A stretch of DNA of 64,000 bases, taken from IMG/VR virus record IMGVR_UViG_3300028676_000005, positions 165,430-229,429 of that record. The stretch is one strand, 5' to 3'. The position numbers and the translations under genes were made by a program. How positions within the stretch are numbered: position 1 is the stretch's first letter; the number at the start of each line of letters is the position of its first letter. The notes below the pieces were generated by a model. The model ran no database searches, was not told where the DNA came from, and was given only the letters and a program-made list of their open reading frames with translations. Shown here one piece after another: positions 10,381 to 21,493 of this stretch.

Positions 10381-10929
10381 TTAAGGGTTTTGATTGCCCA
10401 GCAGTTTGTAAACTTCAGCCATGGTGAACTCACCTACTTTACTGTCCACAATCGCACCGAAATGAGATTCCATGAAACCGTGAACATGCAAGATGGCCTC
10501 CAACAATGCACCAGAGAATGTTAGCGCAGAAGCCTTACTCCAGCTGGGCGGTGTTGTTTGGTTCTCGTCGTTAATAACAACCACGAGTTGATTACTTTTG
10601 AAAGAGCTGTATCCAAAAGATGTTGCGTCGGTAAACGCGGCGGATAAGCTTTTACTGTCGACACTATTAAATGCCGCTTTTAACATCTCACCTTCATAAT
10701 CTTTACTGAAGATTAAATCTGGGTCGAGCAAAGCAACACCGAGTTCTTTTGCAGCGCGGTATTGCATAGAAATGATTTGAGCAATTTCACCGTAAGTTGC
10801 CTTTTGATGATATGTCTCAATCGTCGATAAGTTGCTCAACGGAATGCCGACCTTAGCCAACAACTTAACCATAGAGTTGGTCAAGAAGAATACTTCGATC
10901 GGGGAACCGTTAGGTGTCCTGAGAATCAT
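10381..10929 (-). CDS. Conserved protein upstream of MCP (phiKZ gp119-like, virion candidate)
   Basis: 182 aa, AGGAG SD, synteny. Confidence 0.7.
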   Translation of the reverse strand: MILRTPNGSPIEVFFLTNSMVKLLAKVGIPLSNLSTIETYHQKATYGEIAQIISMQYRAAKELGVALLDPDLIFSKDYEGEMLKAAFNSVDSKSLSAAFTDATSFGYSSFKSNQLVVVINDENQTTPPSWSKASALTFSGALLEAILHVHGFMESHFGAIVDSKVGEFTMAEVYKLLGNQNP

Positions 10930-10957
10930 AGCGTTACTCCTGGGGAGTTTGTTTTAA

Positions 10958-12490
10958 ATGAATGACTTACTGGTATTAGTCAAATTGCTTTCAGCAATGT
11001 ACCAAGCCAAGAAACTTAAAGATAAGGTTCTGCTAAAAGAACTGGAGGAGCTTTACGAGGAACTCCCACCGCCGCCACAGGAAGTGTTTGTCCAGAATAA
11101 AGAACTCCGTGACAGCATTAAAGCATCCGTACTTTGGCTCCTCAAAGAGCCTGACGATGAGCCGATCATAAAATTAGCACTTATGCAACGGGTTCGTCTG
11201 TTTTGTGTTGGTCAAGACGATATCAAACTTGCAATTGAAGACGGTCTGGAAGACTTTGACGACGACTTGATGACGCGTAAAGTAATCTACAAACAGATTA
11301 CCGATATCCGTCTGAGCTTTGAAGACAAAGGTTTCTCGGATAAATGGAAGCGGGCAACTAAAGCTTACTTCTACAAAGACATCCATGAAATTACAAAAGA
11401 CGACTGGGTAAAGTTATCCGATCTCATCAACGAACGCATGGGTACGTTGTACGAAGATAAACAGTCAGAAGTACTTTGCGAAATCAGCACCGAGTCGCCA
11501 ACTAGTTTCCATGAAGTTATTGCACTGGCAAAGAAAGAAAACAGTAAAGAAGGTATTATCAAAACTGGTATTCAGGCGCTCAATAAAGCACTGAGTCCGG
11601 ATGGTGGCTTTCGTCGTAGTAAGTTCTACTTGCTTAACGCACTGACTAACCGTGGTAAGTCGCTTACTGTAGCGCACATGGTAGCCTCTGTAGGGCTCTA
11701 TAACAAGCCTCAGTTGCGTAACCCGTCTAAGATACCGACTATCCTCTTGGAATCGGCAGAAGACACCATGGACCTTATTATCCAGCGTATGTATAAGCTA
11801 GCTATTACTGTTAACAGTGACAACGTTCCAGATTTCAACATTGCTGCTCAAGATGACATCGTCGAAGCTATTTGCAGTTGCTTTAAAGCAAATGGTTGGG
11901 TATTGATTATTAAGGTGATCGACTCCAACAAAGATGATTGCAATCAGATGTTTGACCGCATTCGTCGTATGGAACTCAAAGGCCACGAGATCATCTTCTA
12001 CGCCTATGACTACCTGGCTCTGCAAAACTTTGACAAGCTCCCTGGTGAGACTAAATCAGACAAGCTACAGTTGTTGTTCCGTAAGGTTCGTTCCTTCATC
12101 ATCAACCGCGGCATCTGCTTTATCACCCCACACCAGCTGAGTCCAGATGCTAAGAAGCGTCTACAAGAGTCTGATGAAGAATCAGAAGTTTACTTTGCTC
12201 GTGAAGTTGCTGGTAAGTCTTACACCGAGACTTCCACTAAAATCACCAACGAAGTAGACGTAGAGATTACCTTCCACGTTGCCAAGACGTCCTTTAAGAG
12301 TTACTGGACCTTCTGTATTGGTAAACAGCGTGGTGAAGGTTGTGCACCAGAAGATCGCTTTGCTATCTACGACATTGATCCAGTAATGGGGCTCCGTCAT
12401 GATATCAATGGTAAACCTCGTTTCAGGAGAAGTCTGCAGACTAGTCTGGACGATAATGGTAACGTGGTAAAAGACTTTGACTCTATCTAA
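10958..12490 (+). CDS. dnaB: Replicative DnaB-like helicase (phiKZ gp118-like)
   Basis: KTGIQALNKAL..GGFRR, Walker A-like ALTNRGKS, ESAED, AYDYL, ITPHQLS motifs. Confidence 0.9.
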   Translation: MNDLLVLVKLLSAMYQAKKLKDKVLLKELEELYEELPPPPQEVFVQNKELRDSIKASVLWLLKEPDDEPIIKLALMQRVRLFCVGQDDIKLAIEDGLEDFDDDLMTRKVIYKQITDIRLSFEDKGFSDKWKRATKAYFYKDIHEITKDDWVKLSDLINERMGTLYEDKQSEVLCEISTESPTSFHEVIALAKKENSKEGIIKTGIQALNKALSPDGGFRRSKFYLLNALTNRGKSLTVAHMVASVGLYNKPQLRNPSKIPTILLESAEDTMDLIIQRMYKLAITVNSDNVPDFNIAAQDDIVEAICSCFKANGWVLIIKVIDSNKDDCNQMFDRIRRMELKGHEIIFYAYDYLALQNFDKLPGETKSDKLQLLFRKVRSFIINRGICFITPHQLSPDAKKRLQESDEESEVYFAREVAGKSYTETSTKITNEVDVEITFHVAKTSFKSYWTFCIGKQRGEGCAPEDRFAIYDIDPVMGLRHDINGKPRFRRSLQTSLDDNGNVVKDFDSI

Positions 12491-12512
12491 CTGAACCAAA
12501 GCGAACATAACC

Positions 12513-12547
12513 TATACTCTCCTACCCGATAAGGGTAGGAGAGTATA
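12513..12547. terminator. Bidirectional terminator-like hairpin
   Basis: 15-bp stem TATACTCTCCTACCC-gataa-GGGTAGGAGAGTATA between convergent genes. Confidence 0.85.
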
Positions 12548-12573
12548 TAAGGTTTATTTTGCATTTTCTTTTA

Positions 12574-12918
12574 TTAGCTAAACTCAATTACTGACTCGCG
12601 TGCACATTTGGCTTCGCCAATACCGATGGTAAAGTGAAGTCTAACCCCTGTCAATTTCCCTTCTTCAGTGGTTCTGGCGGAAGTCGTGACGTCGATTGTT
12701 ACCCCATCGTTTATCGATGTGAAGTCTCTGGCCGCTGTACCAGCACGATCCTCAAATTTCACAAGCATTTGCGCAAGGGTAAGATTAGTAAGCCCCAAGA
12801 CGTCTTGTGACAAAGTGATGGTCTGTTTAGTAACAGATGTAACAATCAAATGAGCCATGCTAGCTACATGTTCTTCAAAACTTCTTTCTACACTTGAAAG
12901 TTCTACATCAGTAGTCAT
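12574..12918 (-). CDS. Small hypothetical protein
   Basis: ~114 aa from ATG 12918 (AGGTG SD); GTG 12927 is an alternative start. Confidence 0.7.
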   Translation of the reverse strand: MTTDVELSSVERSFEEHVASMAHLIVTSVTKQTITLSQDVLGLTNLTLAQMLVKFEDRAGTAARDFTSINDGVTIDVTTSARTTEEGKLTGVRLHFTIGIGEAKCARESVIEFS

Positions 12919-12936
12919 GTTGTTCACCTGGGTTCA

Positions 12937-13050
12937 TTATCAATAGGGAGGTCGCTTACGCTCCGCTATACAGAAATAGACCTAACCGTCCCCACCCGCT
13001 TCCGCAGATAGTTTTATCAAGTCTTATAAGCTACCTCCCTCAGTTGATAA
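12937..13050 (-). ncRNA. Candidate structured RNA (sRNA or cis-regulatory leader)
   Basis: Nearly the whole intergenic region folds into nested helices closed by a GGAA tetraloop; non-WC pairs within helices are G-U only on the - strand. Confidence 0.55.
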
Positions 13051-14391
13051 TTACTTAACCGAGAACTCTTCAATACCAATAGTCAAAGACAACACGCTGT
13101 GCTCTCTGAAGATGGTGTTAACACTTTCAGTATCAGGTTGGTAGACAGTCCGCAGACCACCCACGCTACCTTCACGATACATCAATGCCTCACTACCACT
13201 CATGTAGTAATAACGAACTGGCATGCACGGATCAATGAGTGCTGCGTTAGAGTTGTGCCAGGACAACCCAGTGATACTTACATCGTTCTGAGCGTTCTCT
13301 GAAAGATGCTTGCAGAGGTTACCAGTCGGAGTCAATACCGTAGGGACCCACTCTTCCCCAGAAGCACGGCTGACCGTCTTGTACTCAGACAAGGAGTCTC
13401 CTCGCGTTGTTGCAGCGACACCCTTGTTGTAGTAACGACCTGTTTCGCCCATTGCCGCATCGACAGAGATAATCCTTTTACCAACGCCATGTTCCTGTCG
13501 GTCAATATCAGTAGTCTCACTGTTGTGGGCACCACCGGTTGAAAAGACAGTAATGGACTTGTCATCCATGATCCAGCTATTGTGCAGGGTGGGAAAAACG
13601 TTCTCTGGTAACCGGTATACGTTTAGTACTCGCCGAGCCTTCTCATAACGACCCATGCGGAACAATGGATAGACACGCCACAATCCCTTCCGGTAGTACA
13701 TACCTAGTCCGGTATTGTAGATGCCATACTCCTCGTTCATTTGAAGGAATTCCCCCAAGTCGATAAGACGGTTACCAAAAGGGATGACCACTTGCTTAAA
13801 TACCCGATCGTTATCAATTGGGTATTCGATGTCAACTCCTTTCCAGGCGTCAGGCCCGGTTAACCCCAGCTTAGATCCGCTCTCAGTTAACTTGTCATGG
13901 AGAACGTTATCCATGCTGGACATGAGGTAAATGTCACTGACAGGCTCGTTACGGATCTTGGCAAACCCTAACTCTAAGAGCTGGAAGTCTACCGTGATCA
14001 TGTTCATGTTATCTTTACTAGCCAAGTCGGCCAACGCACTGTGACCGCCTTGCATTTGAGGATCGTTTCCTGTTAAGGGGATCGCCCTGAACCGGTACTT
14101 GATCTGGCTAGCCTTCTCACGCTCCACAATCTCGATGATAAGGTTATCTCGAAAAGGAAGTATCTTGTTAGTGTAAACACCTGGTTGCGTCTGTACGCGG
14201 ATCGTAGCGTCGTCAGACCGACCACTAGTAAACAGACAGTTACGACTAAACCCCGAAGGCATGAGCAAAGGGATTTGGTCGTTAGGAGTTACCGCAGTAG
14301 CCTCCATCTGAAAGAGTCGTTCATTACGCTGGGTGTTTTCAACATAACGAACGAAATCTATCAGATTTTGTAAGGAACGGGGAGCTTCCAT
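13051..14391 (-). CDS. Virion structural protein (phiKZ gp101-like; possible baseplate hub)
   Basis: 446 aa, beta-rich, YGIYNTGLGMYY motif, end of structural operon. Confidence 0.65.
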   Translation of the reverse strand: MEAPRSLQNLIDFVRYVENTQRNERLFQMEATAVTPNDQIPLLMPSGFSRNCLFTSGRSDDATIRVQTQPGVYTNKILPFRDNLIIEIVEREKASQIKYRFRAIPLTGNDPQMQGGHSALADLASKDNMNMITVDFQLLELGFAKIRNEPVSDIYLMSSMDNVLHDKLTESGSKLGLTGPDAWKGVDIEYPIDNDRVFKQVVIPFGNRLIDLGEFLQMNEEYGIYNTGLGMYYRKGLWRVYPLFRMGRYEKARRVLNVYRLPENVFPTLHNSWIMDDKSITVFSTGGAHNSETTDIDRQEHGVGKRIISVDAAMGETGRYYNKGVAATTRGDSLSEYKTVSRASGEEWVPTVLTPTGNLCKHLSENAQNDVSITGLSWHNSNAALIDPCMPVRYYYMSGSEALMYREGSVGGLRTVYQPDTESVNTIFREHSVLSLTIGIEEFSVK

Positions 14392-14394
14392 TTA

Positions 14395-15156
14395 TTAACC
14401 TGCTGTAAAGATCCAGTTGGGATTAGTAGCGTGTGCGTCTTCTTGTTGAAACAACGAATCTGAAGACTGCACTGCTTGCGGATAAAACATTTGTTGCTGC
14501 TCTTCGTAATTGAACGCACGTGGAGTGTACATTGGTGCGCCCATAGTGCCGCTTGGTGGCTCAAAGGCATCCAGGTGGCTGAAGAAGCTTAAATCGCCAA
14601 TACGGTGAGTATTGATTACGCTGTCGCCCAAAAAGAGCGCAGCAAAGCCTGCAAGGCCTTTACCGTTAAGTTCTGTTTCTTGCTCCAGCATCTTCTTGTT
14701 CGATTCACGATTCTTAAACGGTTTGATCCGTTTGTATTCGGTAAACAGGATGAACGCCAGGTTTTCTAATTTACGCAATTCGCTAAATTCAGGACGTTTA
14801 CATTCCGGTGCGTTTCGGGCAATTTCACACCAGAGTCCAATGAACTCTTGAATTGCATCATAGACCTCAACAATAGTCTTAGTCGGCTTTTCAAAATTAA
14901 AGTCATGAACTGACTCAATGTTGGTGAGCAGGTCAAAGATCTGTGGGATTTTGTAGCGGCGCTTTTGTCGAGTTGTATAAAAATCTGTGTCGTTGGAATA
15001 CCCCTCTTTGTGATAGCTAGGGCGGCTACGAATTTGATCCAAAGACATTAGTTTCTCAGGGGCAATCCAGACGTCGAAGAGTTTGAGGAAACAGATGTCA
15101 TACAACTCAATCAATCGTGCACGGACTTCGCCATAACGTTCGAGGGGCATAAGCAT
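14395..15156 (-). CDS. Conserved hypothetical protein (phiKZ gp100-like)
   Basis: 253 aa, TAATG-coupled to upstream gene. Confidence 0.7.
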   Translation of the reverse strand: MLMPLERYGEVRARLIELYDICFLKLFDVWIAPEKLMSLDQIRSRPSYHKEGYSNDTDFYTTRQKRRYKIPQIFDLLTNIESVHDFNFEKPTKTIVEVYDAIQEFIGLWCEIARNAPECKRPEFSELRKLENLAFILFTEYKRIKPFKNRESNKKMLEQETELNGKGLAGFAALFLGDSVINTHRIGDLSFFSHLDAFEPPSGTMGAPMYTPRAFNYEEQQQMFYPQAVQSSDSLFQQEDAHATNPNWIFTAG

Positions 15157-16463
15157 TACGAGGGTACTCCGATTTTGCGGCTAACGTTAATCAAAAAGAT
15201 AATGATACCGCCGTAGTAAAGCTGTTTAAGCTTAGGCAGCGCAAAGTATTCATCTTTGCAATACTTGAGGAGCGCCTTACGGTCGATTACTTTATTCTTA
15301 AGACTTTGATAGAGAATCTTCTCAAATGTTTCTTGAGGACTCCCATTGTAAAATTCTTCCGAAAACATGTAGGTGACTTTCTTTTCTGGTGCAGGACGCA
15401 GAATAGGGTAACCATCCATGTTGTAATAAGCTTTGGAAACCTTGTACTCTTCTGGGTCAGTCGTAATGAAATACCCAAACTTACTAGAGCGCAAGTTACC
15501 GTAGAGTCGAGTTCCGTTTAAACGGTCAACCCCGATCATAGCAGCTTCAGCGTTTTTGCACATTGGTAGCAGGTTAATGTCCCCACGCAGGATAACATCC
15601 CAAATGTTGACAACACCGTACGTACCAAGAGCACGCCCGCCATACTGGGTTGAGTAACGACCAATAACTGGGTAACCACCTCTCATATCAGGGGTGATGA
15701 CCGCAGACAGGAAATCCACCAAGTACTGGTCGTAGCAGTAAGTGCCACGGGTACCTGTTTGATCCATGGCCACTGGATAGGCAATGGTCTCTTCCGGACG
15801 CCACCACCAGTTACGCATAATCCAACTAGAGATGGTTTGTGTCCAGGAGAAAAGTTCACCCATTGTGTTGAAGTCATCTGGGTTAACCAGACCAACGCCG
15901 CCACTTAAAGCGGAGTCAATGGAATAAACCAATTCTTGCTGAACACGGCGTTCCAGTTCTTCAGCCCAGTCTTTCTGCAAGATACCTACCATGTGAATGG
16001 TAATGCGGTAGACCTTGTTTGCGGTGAACTCTACAATCTCTGGCTGCTCAACAAGTTGAAACAAACCAGCACGACCATCCGTAATCTCGGCAATAAACAC
16101 ATCACCACGAATTGGTGCTACATCGCAAGTAATCCAGCCGGAGTACATGGTAGAACTTTCACCCTTTTCAGGATTAAAGTTAAAGGCCCCATTACCTTCC
16201 AGTTTAATGATCAACTCACGGATACGTGTGTAAGGTTGATATGTAGCTGTGTTGTTTGGATCAAAAGGAGCAGGTTCTTCACTGCCGCGCAAACGCTGAC
16301 GGTAATACTCCACAACAACCGGGGTACCTTGCACCAAAGTAATGAGTGAGGTCTCTGGTTGATAGGCACCTTGAACAATGGAATGTTGATATTGTTCAGA
16401 GTAGATCTTTGGAGCTTCTGGTTGAGGAGGTATCACACTCCCCAGCGGATCAATGTCAAACAT
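15156..16463 (-). CDS. Virion structural protein (phiKZ gp99-like, neck candidate)
   Basis: LITLVQGTPVVVEYYRQ and PIRGDVFIAEITDGRAGLF motifs; start moved to ATG 16463 with GAGGA SD. Confidence 0.7.
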   Translation of the reverse strand: MFDIDPLGSVIPPQPEAPKIYSEQYQHSIVQGAYQPETSLITLVQGTPVVVEYYRQRLRGSEEPAPFDPNNTATYQPYTRIRELIIKLEGNGAFNFNPEKGESSTMYSGWITCDVAPIRGDVFIAEITDGRAGLFQLVEQPEIVEFTANKVYRITIHMVGILQKDWAEELERRVQQELVYSIDSALSGGVGLVNPDDFNTMGELFSWTQTISSWIMRNWWWRPEETIAYPVAMDQTGTRGTYCYDQYLVDFLSAVITPDMRGGYPVIGRYSTQYGGRALGTYGVVNIWDVILRGDINLLPMCKNAEAAMIGVDRLNGTRLYGNLRSSKFGYFITTDPEEYKVSKAYYNMDGYPILRPAPEKKVTYMFSEEFYNGSPQETFEKILYQSLKNKVIDRKALLKYCKDEYFALPKLKQLYYGGIIIFLINVSRKIGVPS

Positions 16464-17988
16464 TGCGCACGTCCTCAATAAACAAATACGCGTTAAGCCC
16501 AATAGAGGCCATGTAACGGTTAAAGTCGTAATCTTTCAATCCACGACCTTTATTGATACCTTTACAGATCTCTCTGGAATGTTCAGCCCAGGGCTTAGGA
16601 AGGTTAACCCAATCAAAGCCAGGAAACAGTCCTGGAAGCATGGCTTCGTCATCAGGGTTATGAAGCAGGTCCGTCCAAAACGAATCCTGATAATCCCTGA
16701 CAGCGAAATCGCACACAACCACAAGTCTGTATCGATTTGCCATGTTTGGAGCCGTCAGCAAGCTTACAACCCCTTCCTCGTCCATTTCTAAACGGTTAGG
16801 GTCTACTTGGATATCTTCCGACCAAACAGTAATGTAGAAAGGACTTTTAGATTGCTTAAACACAACGTCACGTCTGCGAATGATGTAGTTCTTGACTTGC
16901 TCATTCCAGCGGTATCCAGGGATCATAAAAATGTTCCCTAGTTTTTGTGTTTCGACGTTGGCAATCTTTAACCGTACTTGGATAATTGGTTGCAACCAAT
17001 CACCACCAGTAAACTTCCAAGGATCGTAATCTGGAAGTCTTAGGTAGTCGGTACCTTCCCCAGTGCGGGTGCCGGATATATGACGACCAAAGCTGTACTC
17101 AGGGTTTACCCGAATATTGAACTTCTTCTTAAACCCATCGTCTGGACGTGGAATCCAAACAGCCCGGATGTCATCTTGATAAACGCTAAGCGGGTATTGC
17201 AACTCCCAACCAACAAACTCGTTAAAATAGAAGTAGTAACTAAGTTCAACTTCGTATTTGCCAAAGACATCGGCATTACGGGATTTGCTCACTTTAGAAG
17301 ATTTAAAGTAAATACCTATTTCGTCCATGCTCATTGGTACGGCAAGACGCGAGTTCTTACCAGACTCATCACTTACATAAACAAACGGAACTTTGTGGTA
17401 TTGCTTAAACCAATCACTAAAACTAACCGGAGTGGTGTCCGGTTCATTCTTGAGATAAAGCTCGTGCAAATTAGAAAGCATAGCGACGATAGTGTTGTTA
17501 ACTGGTAAATGAACTACCGCACTAAAGTTAAACGCCACAGCCTGCTCATCTTGCGCCCGGTTAATACGACGCTGAAATTGATCGGCCTGCTTCTTTGAGT
17601 TGAAGTTTGCAATAACAGAAACGTTAACAACCAACCCACTCAAAGATGGGTAAATCATCGACGGCTCTTTGTGATTAGTCATCCACACAGGGCGTTCAGT
17701 CATTTCCCGACGCTGGTTAGAAAAGCCTGAGTTGAAATTAGTTTCTTCGAACTCTGCTTTAACAAACAACTTATTACGAAAAACGCCGTCTGTGTAAATG
17801 TTGGTACGAATCTGGTCAGAGGTATTACTACCAACCAGTTTAGCAATTTCATTGTTGCCGTTATAAAAGATCTCGGCTGTACTTTCCAAACCGTAGAACT
17901 TCAGCATACGGCGCAAGGAGTCATAGACCGCAGGACGAGTAACCGTCTTGTAATCTTCCTCTGACTGTACGGTTGCTCTTAGAAGCAT
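16456..17988 (-). CDS. Virion structural protein (phiKZ gp98-like)
   Basis: 510 aa, GAGGTG SD, synteny. Confidence 0.7.
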   Translation of the reverse strand: MLLRATVQSEEDYKTVTRPAVYDSLRRMLKFYGLESTAEIFYNGNNEIAKLVGSNTSDQIRTNIYTDGVFRNKLFVKAEFEETNFNSGFSNQRREMTERPVWMTNHKEPSMIYPSLSGLVVNVSVIANFNSKKQADQFQRRINRAQDEQAVAFNFSAVVHLPVNNTIVAMLSNLHELYLKNEPDTTPVSFSDWFKQYHKVPFVYVSDESGKNSRLAVPMSMDEIGIYFKSSKVSKSRNADVFGKYEVELSYYFYFNEFVGWELQYPLSVYQDDIRAVWIPRPDDGFKKKFNIRVNPEYSFGRHISGTRTGEGTDYLRLPDYDPWKFTGGDWLQPIIQVRLKIANVETQKLGNIFMIPGYRWNEQVKNYIIRRRDVVFKQSKSPFYITVWSEDIQVDPNRLEMDEEGVVSLLTAPNMANRYRLVVVCDFAVRDYQDSFWTDLLHNPDDEAMLPGLFPGFDWVNLPKPWAEHSREICKGINKGRGLKDYDFNRYMASIGLNAYLFIEDVRNV

Positions 17989-21440: not shown

Positions 21441-21493
21441 AAAAAAAAGAAATAGTAAATACCACCACCAGGTTTCCCCAGTGGTGGTATTTA
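21441..21493 (-). terminator. Intrinsic terminator
   Basis: 13-bp stem TAAATACCACCAC/GTGGTGGTATTTA followed by T-run on - strand. Confidence 0.8.

What the first reader, a model, noticed from the sequence alone, without database searches (positions are those of the whole stretch)
12937..13050. 114-nt intergenic RNA that folds only on the minus strand
Seen: starting right after the gp101-like stop, the interval nests five helices. These are TTATCAA/TTGATAA (7 bp), AGGGAGGT/ACCTCCCT (8 bp), GCTTAT/GTAAGC, AGACTTGAT/GTTAGGTCT and CTATCTGC-GGAA-GCGGGTGG, capped by a GNRA tetraloop, with a weak side hairpin in an asymmetric bubble. Seven positions within these helices are C/A mismatches on + but G-U pairs on -, a signature of selection on RNA rather than a DNA inverted repeat. 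An internal TTGATAA (13020-13014) offers an alternative partner for the 5' end, so it could switch. There is no U-tract, so it is unlike the other terminators. Inference: a new phage sRNA (rod with central bubble, loosely 6S-like) or a riboregulator/RNase III site controlling the small gene 12574-12918.
Basis: partly seen in the sequence, partly recalled or inferred. Interest (0 to 1): 0.75.

Follow-up and report, generated by a model that had tools for sequence, protein, structure and literature searches.

The report
Conserved RNA hairpin module after gp101-like gene
The 114-base gap after a late structural gene of this nucleus-forming jumbo phage holds a real RNA structure that folds only on the minus strand; its GNRA-capped core hairpin is kept across EL-like phages and matches no catalogued RNA family, but its function is still inferred.

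Summary
Window 12937-13050 folds on the minus strand at -49.5 kcal/mol (z -5.4) against -29 (z -3.4) on plus.

The phage is a 229-kb, chimallin-encoding relative of Pseudomonas phage EL. A homologous element follows the stop codon of the phiKZ-gp101-like gene in 41 of 44 distinct related loci. It is single-copy per genome. It is 96% identical between two phages whose flanking gene is 82% identical (59% at third codon positions). No Rfam family matches.

- The apical hairpin (YNYYUGS-GNRA-SCRGGKGG) is conserved, with compensatory changes.
- A G-rich run follows it, and an inner enclosing helix is kept in the closer relatives.
- A second hairpin of variable sequence and a pyrimidine-rich tail follow.
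- The outer helices (TTATCAA/TTGATAA, GGGAGGT/ACCTCCC) are specific to the window's lineage.

The downstream gene differs among relatives, so this is not a dedicated riboregulator of 12574-12918. It is not 6S-like.

Best reading (inferred): a cis-acting hairpin module, recognised by a factor, at the end of the late operon. It would control read-through, processing or stability. A 3'-UTR-derived small RNA is the main rival.

The parts
12937..13050 (-). It begins 1 nt after the stop codon of the gp101-like gene.
   Evidence: RNA fold -49.5 kcal/mol, z -5.4. It is 95.7% identical to L002, against 82% in the flanking gene. Single copy in the genome.
12992..13011 (-). hp1, the conserved apical hairpin CUAUCUGC-GGAA-GCGGGUGG: 8 bp, 3 G-U pairs, GNRA loop at 13003-13000.
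   Evidence: There are 17 distinct variants in relatives. 93.4% of cells are paired, 3 pairs show changes on both sides (15 cells), and the covariation score is 0.59 against 0.35 in shuffles (0 of 500 as high). Slid controls reach at most 60% paired. CM R1 gives one strong hit per genome (26-35 bits) in the four IMG/VR genomes searched.
12986..12999 (-). G-rich run GCGGGUGGGGACGG: the 3' arm of hp1 plus the following Gs.
   Evidence: G-runs follow hp1 in all groups. The invariant columns of alignment A1 lie here and in hp1.
13016..13024 (-). 5' arm of the inner enclosing helix (H4/P1), AGACUUGAU.
   Evidence: It pairs with 12978-12986. At the same alignment columns it is kept 9/9 in L002 and 8/9 in L003 and L004. 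One column over it is 7/9 in L006 and L007. It is absent in L010, L017 and EL at those columns. Changes are one-sided only.
12978..12986 (-). 3' arm of H4/P1, GUUAGGUCU.
13023..13029 (-). UUAUAAG, the window's version of a conserved UAUR / UUAUACAC / CCUAUGCCUAUG motif upstream of hp1.
   Evidence: Columns A27 and T28 are invariant in A1. The motif is unique per genome, so it is not a generic promoter.
12966..12979 (-). U/A-rich linker CUAUUUCUGUAUAG. Relatives have UAUUUUUGCUAUAGGCUAAG or GAUAUAAACUAAG.
   Evidence: Conserved block. The relatives' version GATATWAACTA has its only exact match at the element in two group B genomes.
12951..12966 (-). GCGGAG-CGUAAG-CGAC, the position of the second hairpin (hp2). 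Here it is reduced to a GC-GUAA-GC mini-hairpin whose 3' half forms H3.
   Evidence: In relatives the same flanks (GGAG...CGAC) enclose strong hairpins of unrelated sequence, 6-15 bp.
12945..12952 (-). Pyrimidine-rich tail ACCUCCCU (anti-SD-like). It is the 3' arm of H2.
   Evidence: Relatives carry YUUCCUUNUUCU at this place. It pairs with GGGAGGU at 13033-13040 only in this lineage, L010 and group E.
13033..13049 (-). 5' arms of the lineage-specific outer helices H1 (13044-13049) and H2 (13033-13040).
   Evidence: 6/6 and 8/8 pairs in the window and L002, 0-1/6 and 1-4/8 elsewhere. The duplex test between 5' flank and tail gives p=0.003 here and is unremarkable in most other lineages.
13051..14391 (-). 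Upstream gene, 446 aa, a phiKZ gp101 / EL gp071 homologue (phrog_3245, virion-associated in relatives). The element is always attached to its stop codon.
12574..12918 (-). Downstream 114-aa gene (SD AGGUGA at 12924-12929). It matches no Pfam or PHROG family, and only L002 carries a homologue at this position.
12513..12547 (-). Ordinary hairpin terminator that ends the minus-strand unit. It lies between the 114-aa gene and the convergent DnaB-like gene.

Best explanation
Shown: the interval encodes a minus-strand RNA structure that is conserved across the EL-like clade of nucleus-forming jumbo phages. It sits in the 3' untranslated or intercistronic stretch directly after the stop codon of the gp101-like late structural gene.

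The conserved core runs in this order:
1. a short UAUR motif;
2. an 8-bp, G-U-rich hairpin with a GNRA loop (hp1), held in sequence as well as in pairing;
3. a G-rich run that pairs back to pyrimidines upstream;
4. a U/A-rich linker;
5. a second hairpin of free sequence (hp2);
6. a pyrimidine-rich, anti-SD-like tail.

Inferred: it acts in cis on the late polycistronic transcript at the operon's end. hp1 would be a recognition hairpin for a phage or host factor. The G-rich and pyrimidine-rich tracts can pair in alternative ways. Together they would decide whether the transcript ends or is cut here, leaving a protected 3' end on the structural mRNA, or continues into the variable accessory gene or genes downstream. 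This resembles a nut/RAT-type read-through signal combined with an intercistronic processing and stability element.

The confidence of 0.42 is for this cis mechanism. That the RNA structure itself is real and conserved I put at about 0.9.
For: - Strand-specific stability as RNA, which is lost with DNA parameters.
- Homologous element after the same gene in 41 of 44 distinct loci: 33 with canonical hp1, 8 with variant or degenerate forms including phage EL.
- Purifying selection: 95.7% identity against 82% in the gene and 59% at third codon positions.
- hp1 covariation. hp0 and hp2 show compensatory changes. hp2 stems are unrelated in sequence at a fixed distance from hp1.
- One strong copy per genome in the four IMG/VR genomes searched; its motifs are not the generic early promoter.
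- The element is anchored to the upstream stop codon while the downstream gene varies across at least 8 unrelated families.
- Operon-end context. More distant relatives have a plain terminator at this site. In group C hp1 overlaps the 5' arm of a terminator-like hairpin plus U-tract. In group B hp2 with its tail scores as terminator-like, and its 5' arm can pair instead with the G-run.
- No early-promoter motif lies between the element and the next gene.
- The genome encodes chimallin. Transcription and translation are therefore separated (review PMC12908238). That favours control by a factor or by RNA folding over ribosome-coupled attenuation.
Against: - No transcript ends, cleavage sites or binding partner are known. 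The RNA libraries gave only fragmented contigs of a ~93% relative.
- In the window's own lineage no terminator-like hairpin follows hp1, yet the element is strongly conserved. Pure antitermination therefore cannot be its whole function.
- A mere stability barrier would not need a conserved sequence.
- Long-range pairings differ between lineages, so no single switch model fits all of them.
- Middle and late promoters of these phages have almost no consensus (PMC7598289). A promoter inside the element cannot be excluded.
Confidence: 0.42

Rival explanations
1. A trans-acting small RNA. It would be made either from a promoter inside the element (the UAUR motif resembles the TATG core of phiKZ late promoters) or by cleavage of the 3' UTR. 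It would end at hp2 and the pyrimidine tail, and its G-rich or CU-rich tracts would act as a seed.
For: - The layout of structured 5' domain, A/U-rich linker and terminator-like hairpin in groups B and C is the classic sRNA or 3'-UTR-sRNA layout.
- Single copy and strong conservation.
- Kept even where no obvious downstream gene exists (L090, L034).
- sRNAs are known in related jumbo phages (PMC11512511).
- Summed contig depth in one metatranscriptome is highest over the element, though this is confounded by relatives mapping only to the conserved part.
Against: - The most conserved part is base-paired (hp1), not a single-stranded seed.
- The inner helix uses sequence upstream of the UAUR motif, which implies that the upstream mRNA is part of the fold.
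- The window lineage has no 3' terminator at the element.
- The UAUR motif is unique in each genome.
- No ends were mapped.
Confidence: 0.25
2. A translational riboregulator or coupling device for whatever gene lies downstream. The anti-SD-like tail masks the next ribosome-binding site. The SD-like G-run, or the 5' flank that a terminating ribosome unwinds, competes for the tail.
For: - The tail (UUCCUU / CCUCC) is complementary to SD sequences.
- In group B, RNAalifold pairs the tail with the SD of the next gene, with one compensatory and several one-sided changes.
- The element starts 1-10 nt after the stop codon, inside the reach of a terminating ribosome.
- G-U-rich arms allow alternative partners.
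Against: - In the window the SD (12924-12929) and AUG are unpaired in the fold.
- In EL and group E the next gene is 240-350 nt away, and in some loci it appears absent.
- The downstream genes are unrelated.
- The model does not explain the conservation of hp1.
Confidence: 0.12
3. A decayed or leaky intrinsic terminator, or a generic RNase III/E processing hairpin, with no specific partner.
For: - The site is an operon end, and distant relatives have plain terminators here.
- A true terminator in the window (21461-21488) has an hp1-like apex, CUGGG-GAAA-CCUGGUGG.
- In several group A relatives a U-rich stretch follows the inner helix.
- The window's outer stack of about 20 bp could be cut by RNase III.
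Against: - Terminator stems drift freely, as hp2 does. hp1 instead is held in sequence across lineages whose flanking protein is about 52% identical.
- There is no U-tract in the window.
- Third-position identity is 59% in the gene against 96% in the element.
Confidence: 0.1
4. A DNA-level element, such as a single-strand initiation hairpin, an origin or a protein-binding site beside the DnaB-like helicase gene, or a G-rich R-loop or G-quadruplex former.
For: - It always lies between the gp101-like gene and the convergent DnaB-like gene.
- G-tracts follow hp1.
- GCGAAAGC-type loops also form stable DNA mini-hairpins (my own knowledge, not tested here).
Against: - With DNA parameters the fold is weak and hp1 is not formed.
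- Many G-U pairs would be G-T in DNA.
- The GC skew of the genome shows no feature here.
- There are no iterons or repeats.
Confidence: 0.05
5. A 6S-like RNA that binds RNA polymerase.
For: Only the rod-with-bubble shape of the window's own fold.
Against: - No match to the 6S families, even at E up to 10.
- It is 114 nt.
- The rod's outer helices are lineage-specific.
- phiKZ-type phages transcribe with their own non-sigma-70 polymerases (PMC7598289).
Confidence: 0.02

Closest known systems
Lambda-type nut sites (boxA + boxB hairpin) and BglG/LicT-type RAT antiterminator hairpins
   Same: A short hairpin conserved in sequence, with a GNRA-type loop. It sits in transcribed intergenic RNA just after a stop codon and just before a terminator of free sequence, as nutR sits between cro and tR1. 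In group C relatives it partly overlaps the terminator's 5' arm, as a RAT does.
   Different: - The stem is 8 bp and G-U-rich with a true tetraloop, and no boxA sequence is present.
- No N-like or CAT-domain protein has been identified.
- The polymerase would be the phage's non-canonical multisubunit enzyme.
- The window lineage has no adjacent terminator.
- The resemblance is one of layout only.
T7 RNase III processing sites (R1.1 type) and lambda sib retroregulator
   Same: An irregular long hairpin between cistrons or at the 3' end of a gene in a phage polycistronic RNA. Cleavage there would leave a protective 3' hairpin or trigger decay.
   Different: T7 sites occur in multiple copies and are similar to one another, whereas this element is single-copy. 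A dsRNA stack of at least 20 bp exists only in the window lineage. No cleavage data exist.
3'-UTR-derived and phage-encoded sRNAs, including 201phi2-1 sRNA005 / phiKZ sRNA upstream of gp182 (PMC11512511)
   Same: A small structured RNA conserved by position among jumbo phages, with a structured body, A/U linker and terminal hairpin.
   Different: The published sRNA lies in the 5' UTR of the gp182-type tail gene. This element lies 3' of the gp101-type gene, and phiKZ has no gap after gp101 at all. No sequence similarity was tested or is claimed. Expression is unproven.
Intrinsic terminators of the same phage (e.g. window 12513-12547 and 21461-21488)
   Same: Operon-end position and a GNRA-capped hairpin. 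The apex of the 21461-21488 terminator resembles hp1.
   Different: Those have perfect 15-bp stems and U-tracts, and their sequences are not conserved between phages. This element has interrupted helices, no U-tract, and a conserved sequence.

Membership tests
6S RNA (Rfam RF00013 and relatives) | Match to the covariance model | tested here: not met
   No hit at gathering score in the whole window. No hit at E up to 10 in 12500-13500 or up to 5 in 12 homologous loci.
6S RNA (Rfam RF00013 and relatives) | RNA of about 180 nt: a long closing stem, a large central bubble that mimics an open promoter, and a terminal stem, all conserved in shape | tested here: not met
   It is 114 nt. The centre is a small junction with a side hairpin. 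The closing helices are absent from most homologues.
Intrinsic (hairpin + U-tract) terminator | G+C-rich uninterrupted stem followed at once by a U-tract | tested here: not met
   None in 12937-13050; the only one in 12300-13300 is at 12513-12547. Neighbouring hairpins in relatives do qualify: L013 and L014 hp2. L003 and L007 do not.
RNase III processing site (T7 R1.1 type) | About two turns of coaxial dsRNA with an internal loop at the cleavage site | tested here: inconclusive
   H1+H2+H3 give 20 bp with two interruptions in the window, but this stack is lineage-specific.
RNase III processing site (T7 R1.1 type) | Cleavage that depends on RNase III | not testable with these tools
   This needs RNA from infected wild-type and RNase III-deficient (rnc) host cells.
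nut / boxB-type antitermination site | Short hairpin with a GNRA-fold loop in nascent RNA upstream of terminators | tested here: inconclusive
   GNRA hairpin is present and conserved. Terminator-like hairpins lie downstream in groups B and C but not in the window.
nut / boxB-type antitermination site | A boxA-like linear element and a cognate arginine-rich N-type protein | not tested
   Only a UAUR motif is conserved upstream. No search for a partner protein was made.
RAT / terminator attenuator (BglG, LicT type) | Conserved hairpin whose 3' arm overlaps the 5' arm of a terminator | tested here: not met
   Met only in group C relatives such as L013 and L044. In the window and in groups A and B, hp1 does not overlap a terminator.
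Riboswitch / dedicated cis-regulator of the downstream gene | Constant association with one class of downstream gene | tested here: not met
   Downstream ORFs fall into at least 8 unrelated families, and none was found in some loci.
Free-standing trans-acting sRNA | Its own transcription start or processing site and a defined 3' end that give a discrete small RNA | tested here: inconclusive
   Only assembled contigs from RNA libraries of a ~93% relative were available, with no end information.
Jumbo-phage sRNA005 / sRNA-gp182 (PMC11512511) | Location in the 5' UTR of the phiKZ gp182-type tail gene | tested here: not met
   The element follows the gp101-type gene. The published sRNA is defined by a different neighbour.
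tRNA / tmRNA-like element | Cloverleaf detected by ARAGORN | tested here: not met
   No tRNA or tmRNA in the window. Look-alikes of hp1 in phage tRNA arrays are unrelated: one lies inside a tRNA-Trp call, the other just upstream of a tRNA-Arg.

The most novel reading that the evidence does not exclude
hp1 with its flanking G-rich and pyrimidine-rich tracts would be the first cis-acting RNA signal recognised by a dedicated factor in nucleus-forming jumbo phages. It could be an antitermination or termination signal for the non-canonical phage RNA polymerase. It could equally be a processing, export or stability tag that sets the fate of the late structural mRNA, in a system where transcription and translation are physically separated.
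Probability: 0.15. Interest if true: 0.8.

Novelty: new variant of a known kind. Interest (0 to 1): 0.55.

Why it matters
Almost nothing is known about how nucleus-forming jumbo phages end, process or sort their transcripts. Their late promoters have a four-base consensus, and no cis-RNA regulatory signal has been defined for their own polymerases. This element is single-copy, conserved in sequence and supported by covariation, and it lies at a fixed operon end. It is also present in a cultivable phage (EL, on Pseudomonas aeruginosa), which makes it a concrete handle. It can be deleted, mutated with compensatory changes, used as bait for its binding partner, and mapped by end-sequencing. If it turns out to be only a stabilising hairpin, it is still a useful new RNA motif for annotating EL-like genomes.

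Tried and rejected
- **Rfam.** Whole window at gathering score, the local region at E up to 10, and 12 homologous loci at E up to 5. Nothing matched at the element.
- **tRNA or tmRNA.** None.
- **DNA similarity to deposited phages.** No hit at the element; only one short unrelated match upstream.
- **Small peptide across the element.** Group B has a 22-26-codon ORF from the CCUAUG motif, but indels shift its frame between L014, L015 and L016 while the RNA helices stay. Read from the sequences. Rejected.
- **Generic promoter or terminator.** The clade's early-promoter motif YCTATATTAC occurs 5-15 times per genome but not in the element. The element's own motifs have no second exact copy in the genomes searched, and the tail motif is no commoner than chance in the window's genome.
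- **Conserved closing helix.** Duplex energy between the 5' flank and the tail, against shuffles, in 22 lineage representatives. Only the window (p=0.003) and L043 (0.02) stand out.
- **Replication origin by GC skew.** No signal.
- **Expression.** Two run searches and one read-laying gave only Logan contigs of a ~93% relative in wastewater RNA libraries. There were no ends, and depth is confounded by the element being more conserved than its flanks.
- **hp1 in other contexts.** An IMG/VR pattern scan gave 27 stretches. Eleven are the known gp101 loci. The other 16 fall in unrelated sequence, mostly G+C-rich, or in and beside phage tRNA arrays.
- **Identity with the published jumbo-phage sRNA near gp182.** Different locus.
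- **Canonical 11-nt GAAA tetraloop receptor (UAUGG/CCUAAG).** Considered by eye only; the motifs do not fit it.

Full report
**1. What is in the window**

The interval 12937-13050 lies between two minus-strand ORFs, 13051-14391 (446 aa) and 12574-12918 (114 aa). An ordinary hairpin terminator at 12513-12547 and a convergent DnaB-like helicase gene (10958-12490, plus strand) follow.

- As RNA the minus strand folds at -49.5 kcal/mol (z -5.43, no shuffle as good). The plus strand gives -29.0 (z -3.44).
Ten are G-U, and seven of those lie in the five main helices.
- With DNA parameters both strands fold weakly (z about -2) and the apical hairpin does not form.

**2. What genome this is**

- The window is bases 165430-229429 of a 229-kb IMG/VR virus record rated complete. 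It was assembled from peat metagenomes.
- The 446-aa protein is phrog_3245.
- The genome encodes a chimallin (nuclear shell protein, phrog_4795, E 2e-95). It therefore belongs to the nucleus-forming jumbo phages, in which transcription and translation are physically separated (review PMC12908238).

**3. Homologues**

Protein-guided searches of IMG/VR and JGI metagenomes returned loci with the gp101-like gene. These hold 44 distinct downstream sequences.

- 33 carry a canonical version of the apical hairpin (hp1).
- Phage EL and L090 carry variants.
- Six carry a degenerate form, CUGGGGAAAGGGG (L042 and the RisingSun-like group E).
- Three have none: L054, L088 and Erwinia phage RisingSun.
- Other distant relatives (Vibrio phage pTD1, L049) have a plain terminator there, followed by an early-promoter motif. 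In FishSpeaker a short ORF comes first.
- phiKZ has no gap after gp101 at all.

The element always starts within a few bases of the stop codon, and it always lies between the gp101-like gene and the convergent DnaB-like gene. The distance between those two genes ranges from 63 to about 2,400 nt. The first downstream ORF falls into at least eight unrelated families.

**4. Selection**

- Between the window and L002 the element is 95.7% identical. The gp101-like gene is 82% identical, and 59% at third codon positions.
- A contig from an RNA library differs from the window at one position in 101 across the element, while its flanks differ by about 7%.
- Each of the four IMG/VR genomes searched has one strong hit to a covariance model of hp1 (26-35 bits). 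Second hits are weak (at most 18 bits). EL's variant hp1 is missed by the model.
- The one real secondary hit is an ordinary terminator at window 21461-21488 with a similar apex.
- The element's linear motifs have no second exact copy in the genomes searched.
- The clade's early-promoter motif YCTATATTAC occurs 5-15 times per genome, always elsewhere.
- A pattern scan of IMG/VR found hp1 outside the gp101 context only in unrelated sequence or in and beside phage tRNA arrays.

**5. Which parts of the fold are conserved**

hp1:
- 17 distinct sequences, 93.4% of cells paired.
- Three pairs change on both sides: CG/GC at the loop-closing pair, AU/UG/GU/CG at the third pair, and CG/UA at the basal pair.
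- The covariation score is 0.59 against 0.35 in shuffles (0 of 500 as high). Slid controls reach at most 60% paired.
- Its U-G pairs are kept as such, or exchanged one-sidedly with C-G or U-A, in all lineages. Loops are GGAA, GAAA or GAGA, with GAAG once.

Other elements:
- Group B relatives add a small GNRA hairpin (hp0) with CG/UA exchanges.
- The G-rich run after hp1 pairs back to pyrimidines upstream. At the same alignment columns it holds 8-9 of 9 pairs in L002-L004, and 7 of 9 one column over in L006 and L007. It does not hold in L010, L017 or EL. Group B has a YCYCC/GGGGA equivalent. Changes are mostly one-sided, so support is moderate.
- In most relatives a second hairpin (hp2) sits about 33-36 nt after hp1. 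Its stems are unrelated in sequence and 6-15 bp long, with compensatory changes within group B. In group A it is inserted between the conserved words GGAG and CGAC. In the window it has shrunk to GC-GUAA-GC.
- After hp2 comes a pyrimidine-rich tail: YUUCCUUNUUCU in relatives, ACCUCCCU in the window.

A test of duplex energy between the 5' flank and the tail is significant in the window (p=0.003) and unremarkable in most other lineages. Whole-element z-scores in 15 relatives range from -0.7 to -6.8, with a median near -2.6.

So the 114-nt rod is this lineage's elaboration of a conserved two-hairpin module.

**6. What it is not**

- No Rfam family matches the window or 12 homologous loci, even at permissive thresholds.
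- It is not a tRNA or tmRNA.
- It is not a peptide gene. The short ORF across group B elements changes frame between close relatives while the helices persist (read).
- It is not 6S-like in size, shape or conservation.
- It is not the conserved jumbo-phage sRNA described upstream of the gp182-type tail gene (PMC11512511).
- It is not an ordinary terminator of this phage. Those have perfect 15-bp stems and U-tracts.
- It is not a dedicated regulator of the 114-aa gene, because that gene is replaced by unrelated genes in relatives. In the window's fold its SD (12924-12929) and AUG are also free.

**7. How it most likely works**

Shown:
- It is transcribed-strand RNA structure under purifying selection.
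- It is glued to the stop codon of the last conserved gene of a late structural operon.
- Plainer relatives have a terminator at this site.
- In group C, hp1's 3' arm shares its Gs with the 5' arm of a terminator-like hairpin plus U-tract.
- In group B, hp2 plus its tail scores as terminator-like, and its C-rich 5' arm can pair instead with the G-run.
- No early-promoter motif separates the element from the next gene.

Inferred:
- The element acts in cis on the late polycistronic RNA at the operon end.
- A hairpin held in sequence, not just in pairing, implies a specific partner.
- The G-rich and pyrimidine-rich tracts, full of G-U pairs, can change partners.
- The outcome would be termination or cleavage here, with a protected 3' end on the structural mRNA, versus continuation into the accessory cassette.
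- Because the phage builds a nucleus, ribosome-coupled transcription attenuation is unlikely. A protein factor or co-transcriptional folding is more plausible.

Against a pure antiterminator: the window lineage has lost the adjacent terminator but keeps the element at 96% identity. Against a pure stability barrier: that role needs no conserved sequence. I therefore give the cis 'recognised hairpin at the operon end' reading 0.42. The rivals are:
- a 3'-UTR-derived or internally promoted sRNA, 0.25;
- a translational coupling or masking device, 0.12;
- a decayed terminator or generic processing hairpin, 0.10;
- a DNA-level element, 0.05;
- a 6S-like RNA, 0.02.

**8. Comparison with known systems and novelty**

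- In layout it is closest to lambda nutR (hairpin after the cro stop and before tR1) and to RAT/terminator attenuators.
- In possible outcome it is closest to T7 RNase III sites or lambda sib.
- In form it is closest to 3'-UTR sRNAs.
- It meets the defining features of none of these where they could be tested (see the membership table).
- It is an undescribed, clade-restricted RNA motif of a familiar general kind. I rate it a new variant of a known kind, with moderate interest.
- Its value is that phage EL carries it, so the experiments listed can settle the mechanism.

Noticed in passing
G000 genome-wide; in the window at about 2630 (-): An early-promoter-like motif, YCTATATTAC(T), preceded by an A/T-rich stretch. 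The window's genome has about 15 intergenic copies, nearly all on the minus strand. Five related genomes have 5-11 copies each, all on one strand. It resembles the AT-rich early (virion RNA polymerase) promoter type described for phiKZ-like phages.
   Followed up: partly
window 12513-12547: A terminator hairpin of 15 pairs between the 114-aa gene and the convergent DnaB-like gene. Its sequence is clearly related to the 'hp2' hairpin of loci L034 and L090, where it follows the element without an intervening gene.
   Followed up: partly
window 21461-21488 (-): A canonical terminator, AAUACCACCACUGGG-GAAA-CCUGGUGGUGGUAUU plus U8, whose apex resembles hp1. It is the only secondary hit of the hp1 covariance model in this genome (17 bits). 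hp1 may descend from a terminator apex of this kind.
   Followed up: partly
G000:C1 61791, 94845, 96423 (+), outside the window: An A-rich stretch, then TATARRCTA, followed at once by a strong hairpin. This occurs at three intergenic sites and resembles the UAUAGGCUAAG-plus-hairpin part of the element in relatives. They may be bidirectional terminators or a minor promoter class. Unexplained.
   Followed up: no
G000:C1:1011-2984 (-), outside the window: A chimallin (phage nuclear shell protein) homologue: phrog_4795, E 2e-95, 687-aa open frame. A direct protein search with phiKZ gp054 failed, and only the profile found it.
   Followed up: yes
L020 (phage EL) 4450-4690: EL has about 350 unannotated bases after gp071. 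After the element comes a long pyrimidine tract (UCUUUCUCUAUUCUCUUU...) followed by a matching purine tract (AGAGAGGGAAGAGAGGGAA), which could form a long hairpin.
   Followed up: no
window 10600-13219 in RNA libraries X21 and X27: Wastewater metatranscriptome assemblies hold contigs of a phage about 93% identical to this one. In X21 they cover the DnaB-like gene, the 114-aa gene and the element, but nothing from 13358 to 16500. The cause could be early or middle expression, or divergence beyond the 90% cut-off. It cannot be resolved from contigs.
   Followed up: partly
L107 and L120 (IMG/VR contigs unrelated to this phage): Phage contigs with arrays of 10-12 tRNA genes; L107 also has a tmRNA. 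They turned up only because the hp1 pattern matches inside a tRNA-Trp call in L107 and just upstream of a tRNA-Arg in L120.
   Followed up: partly
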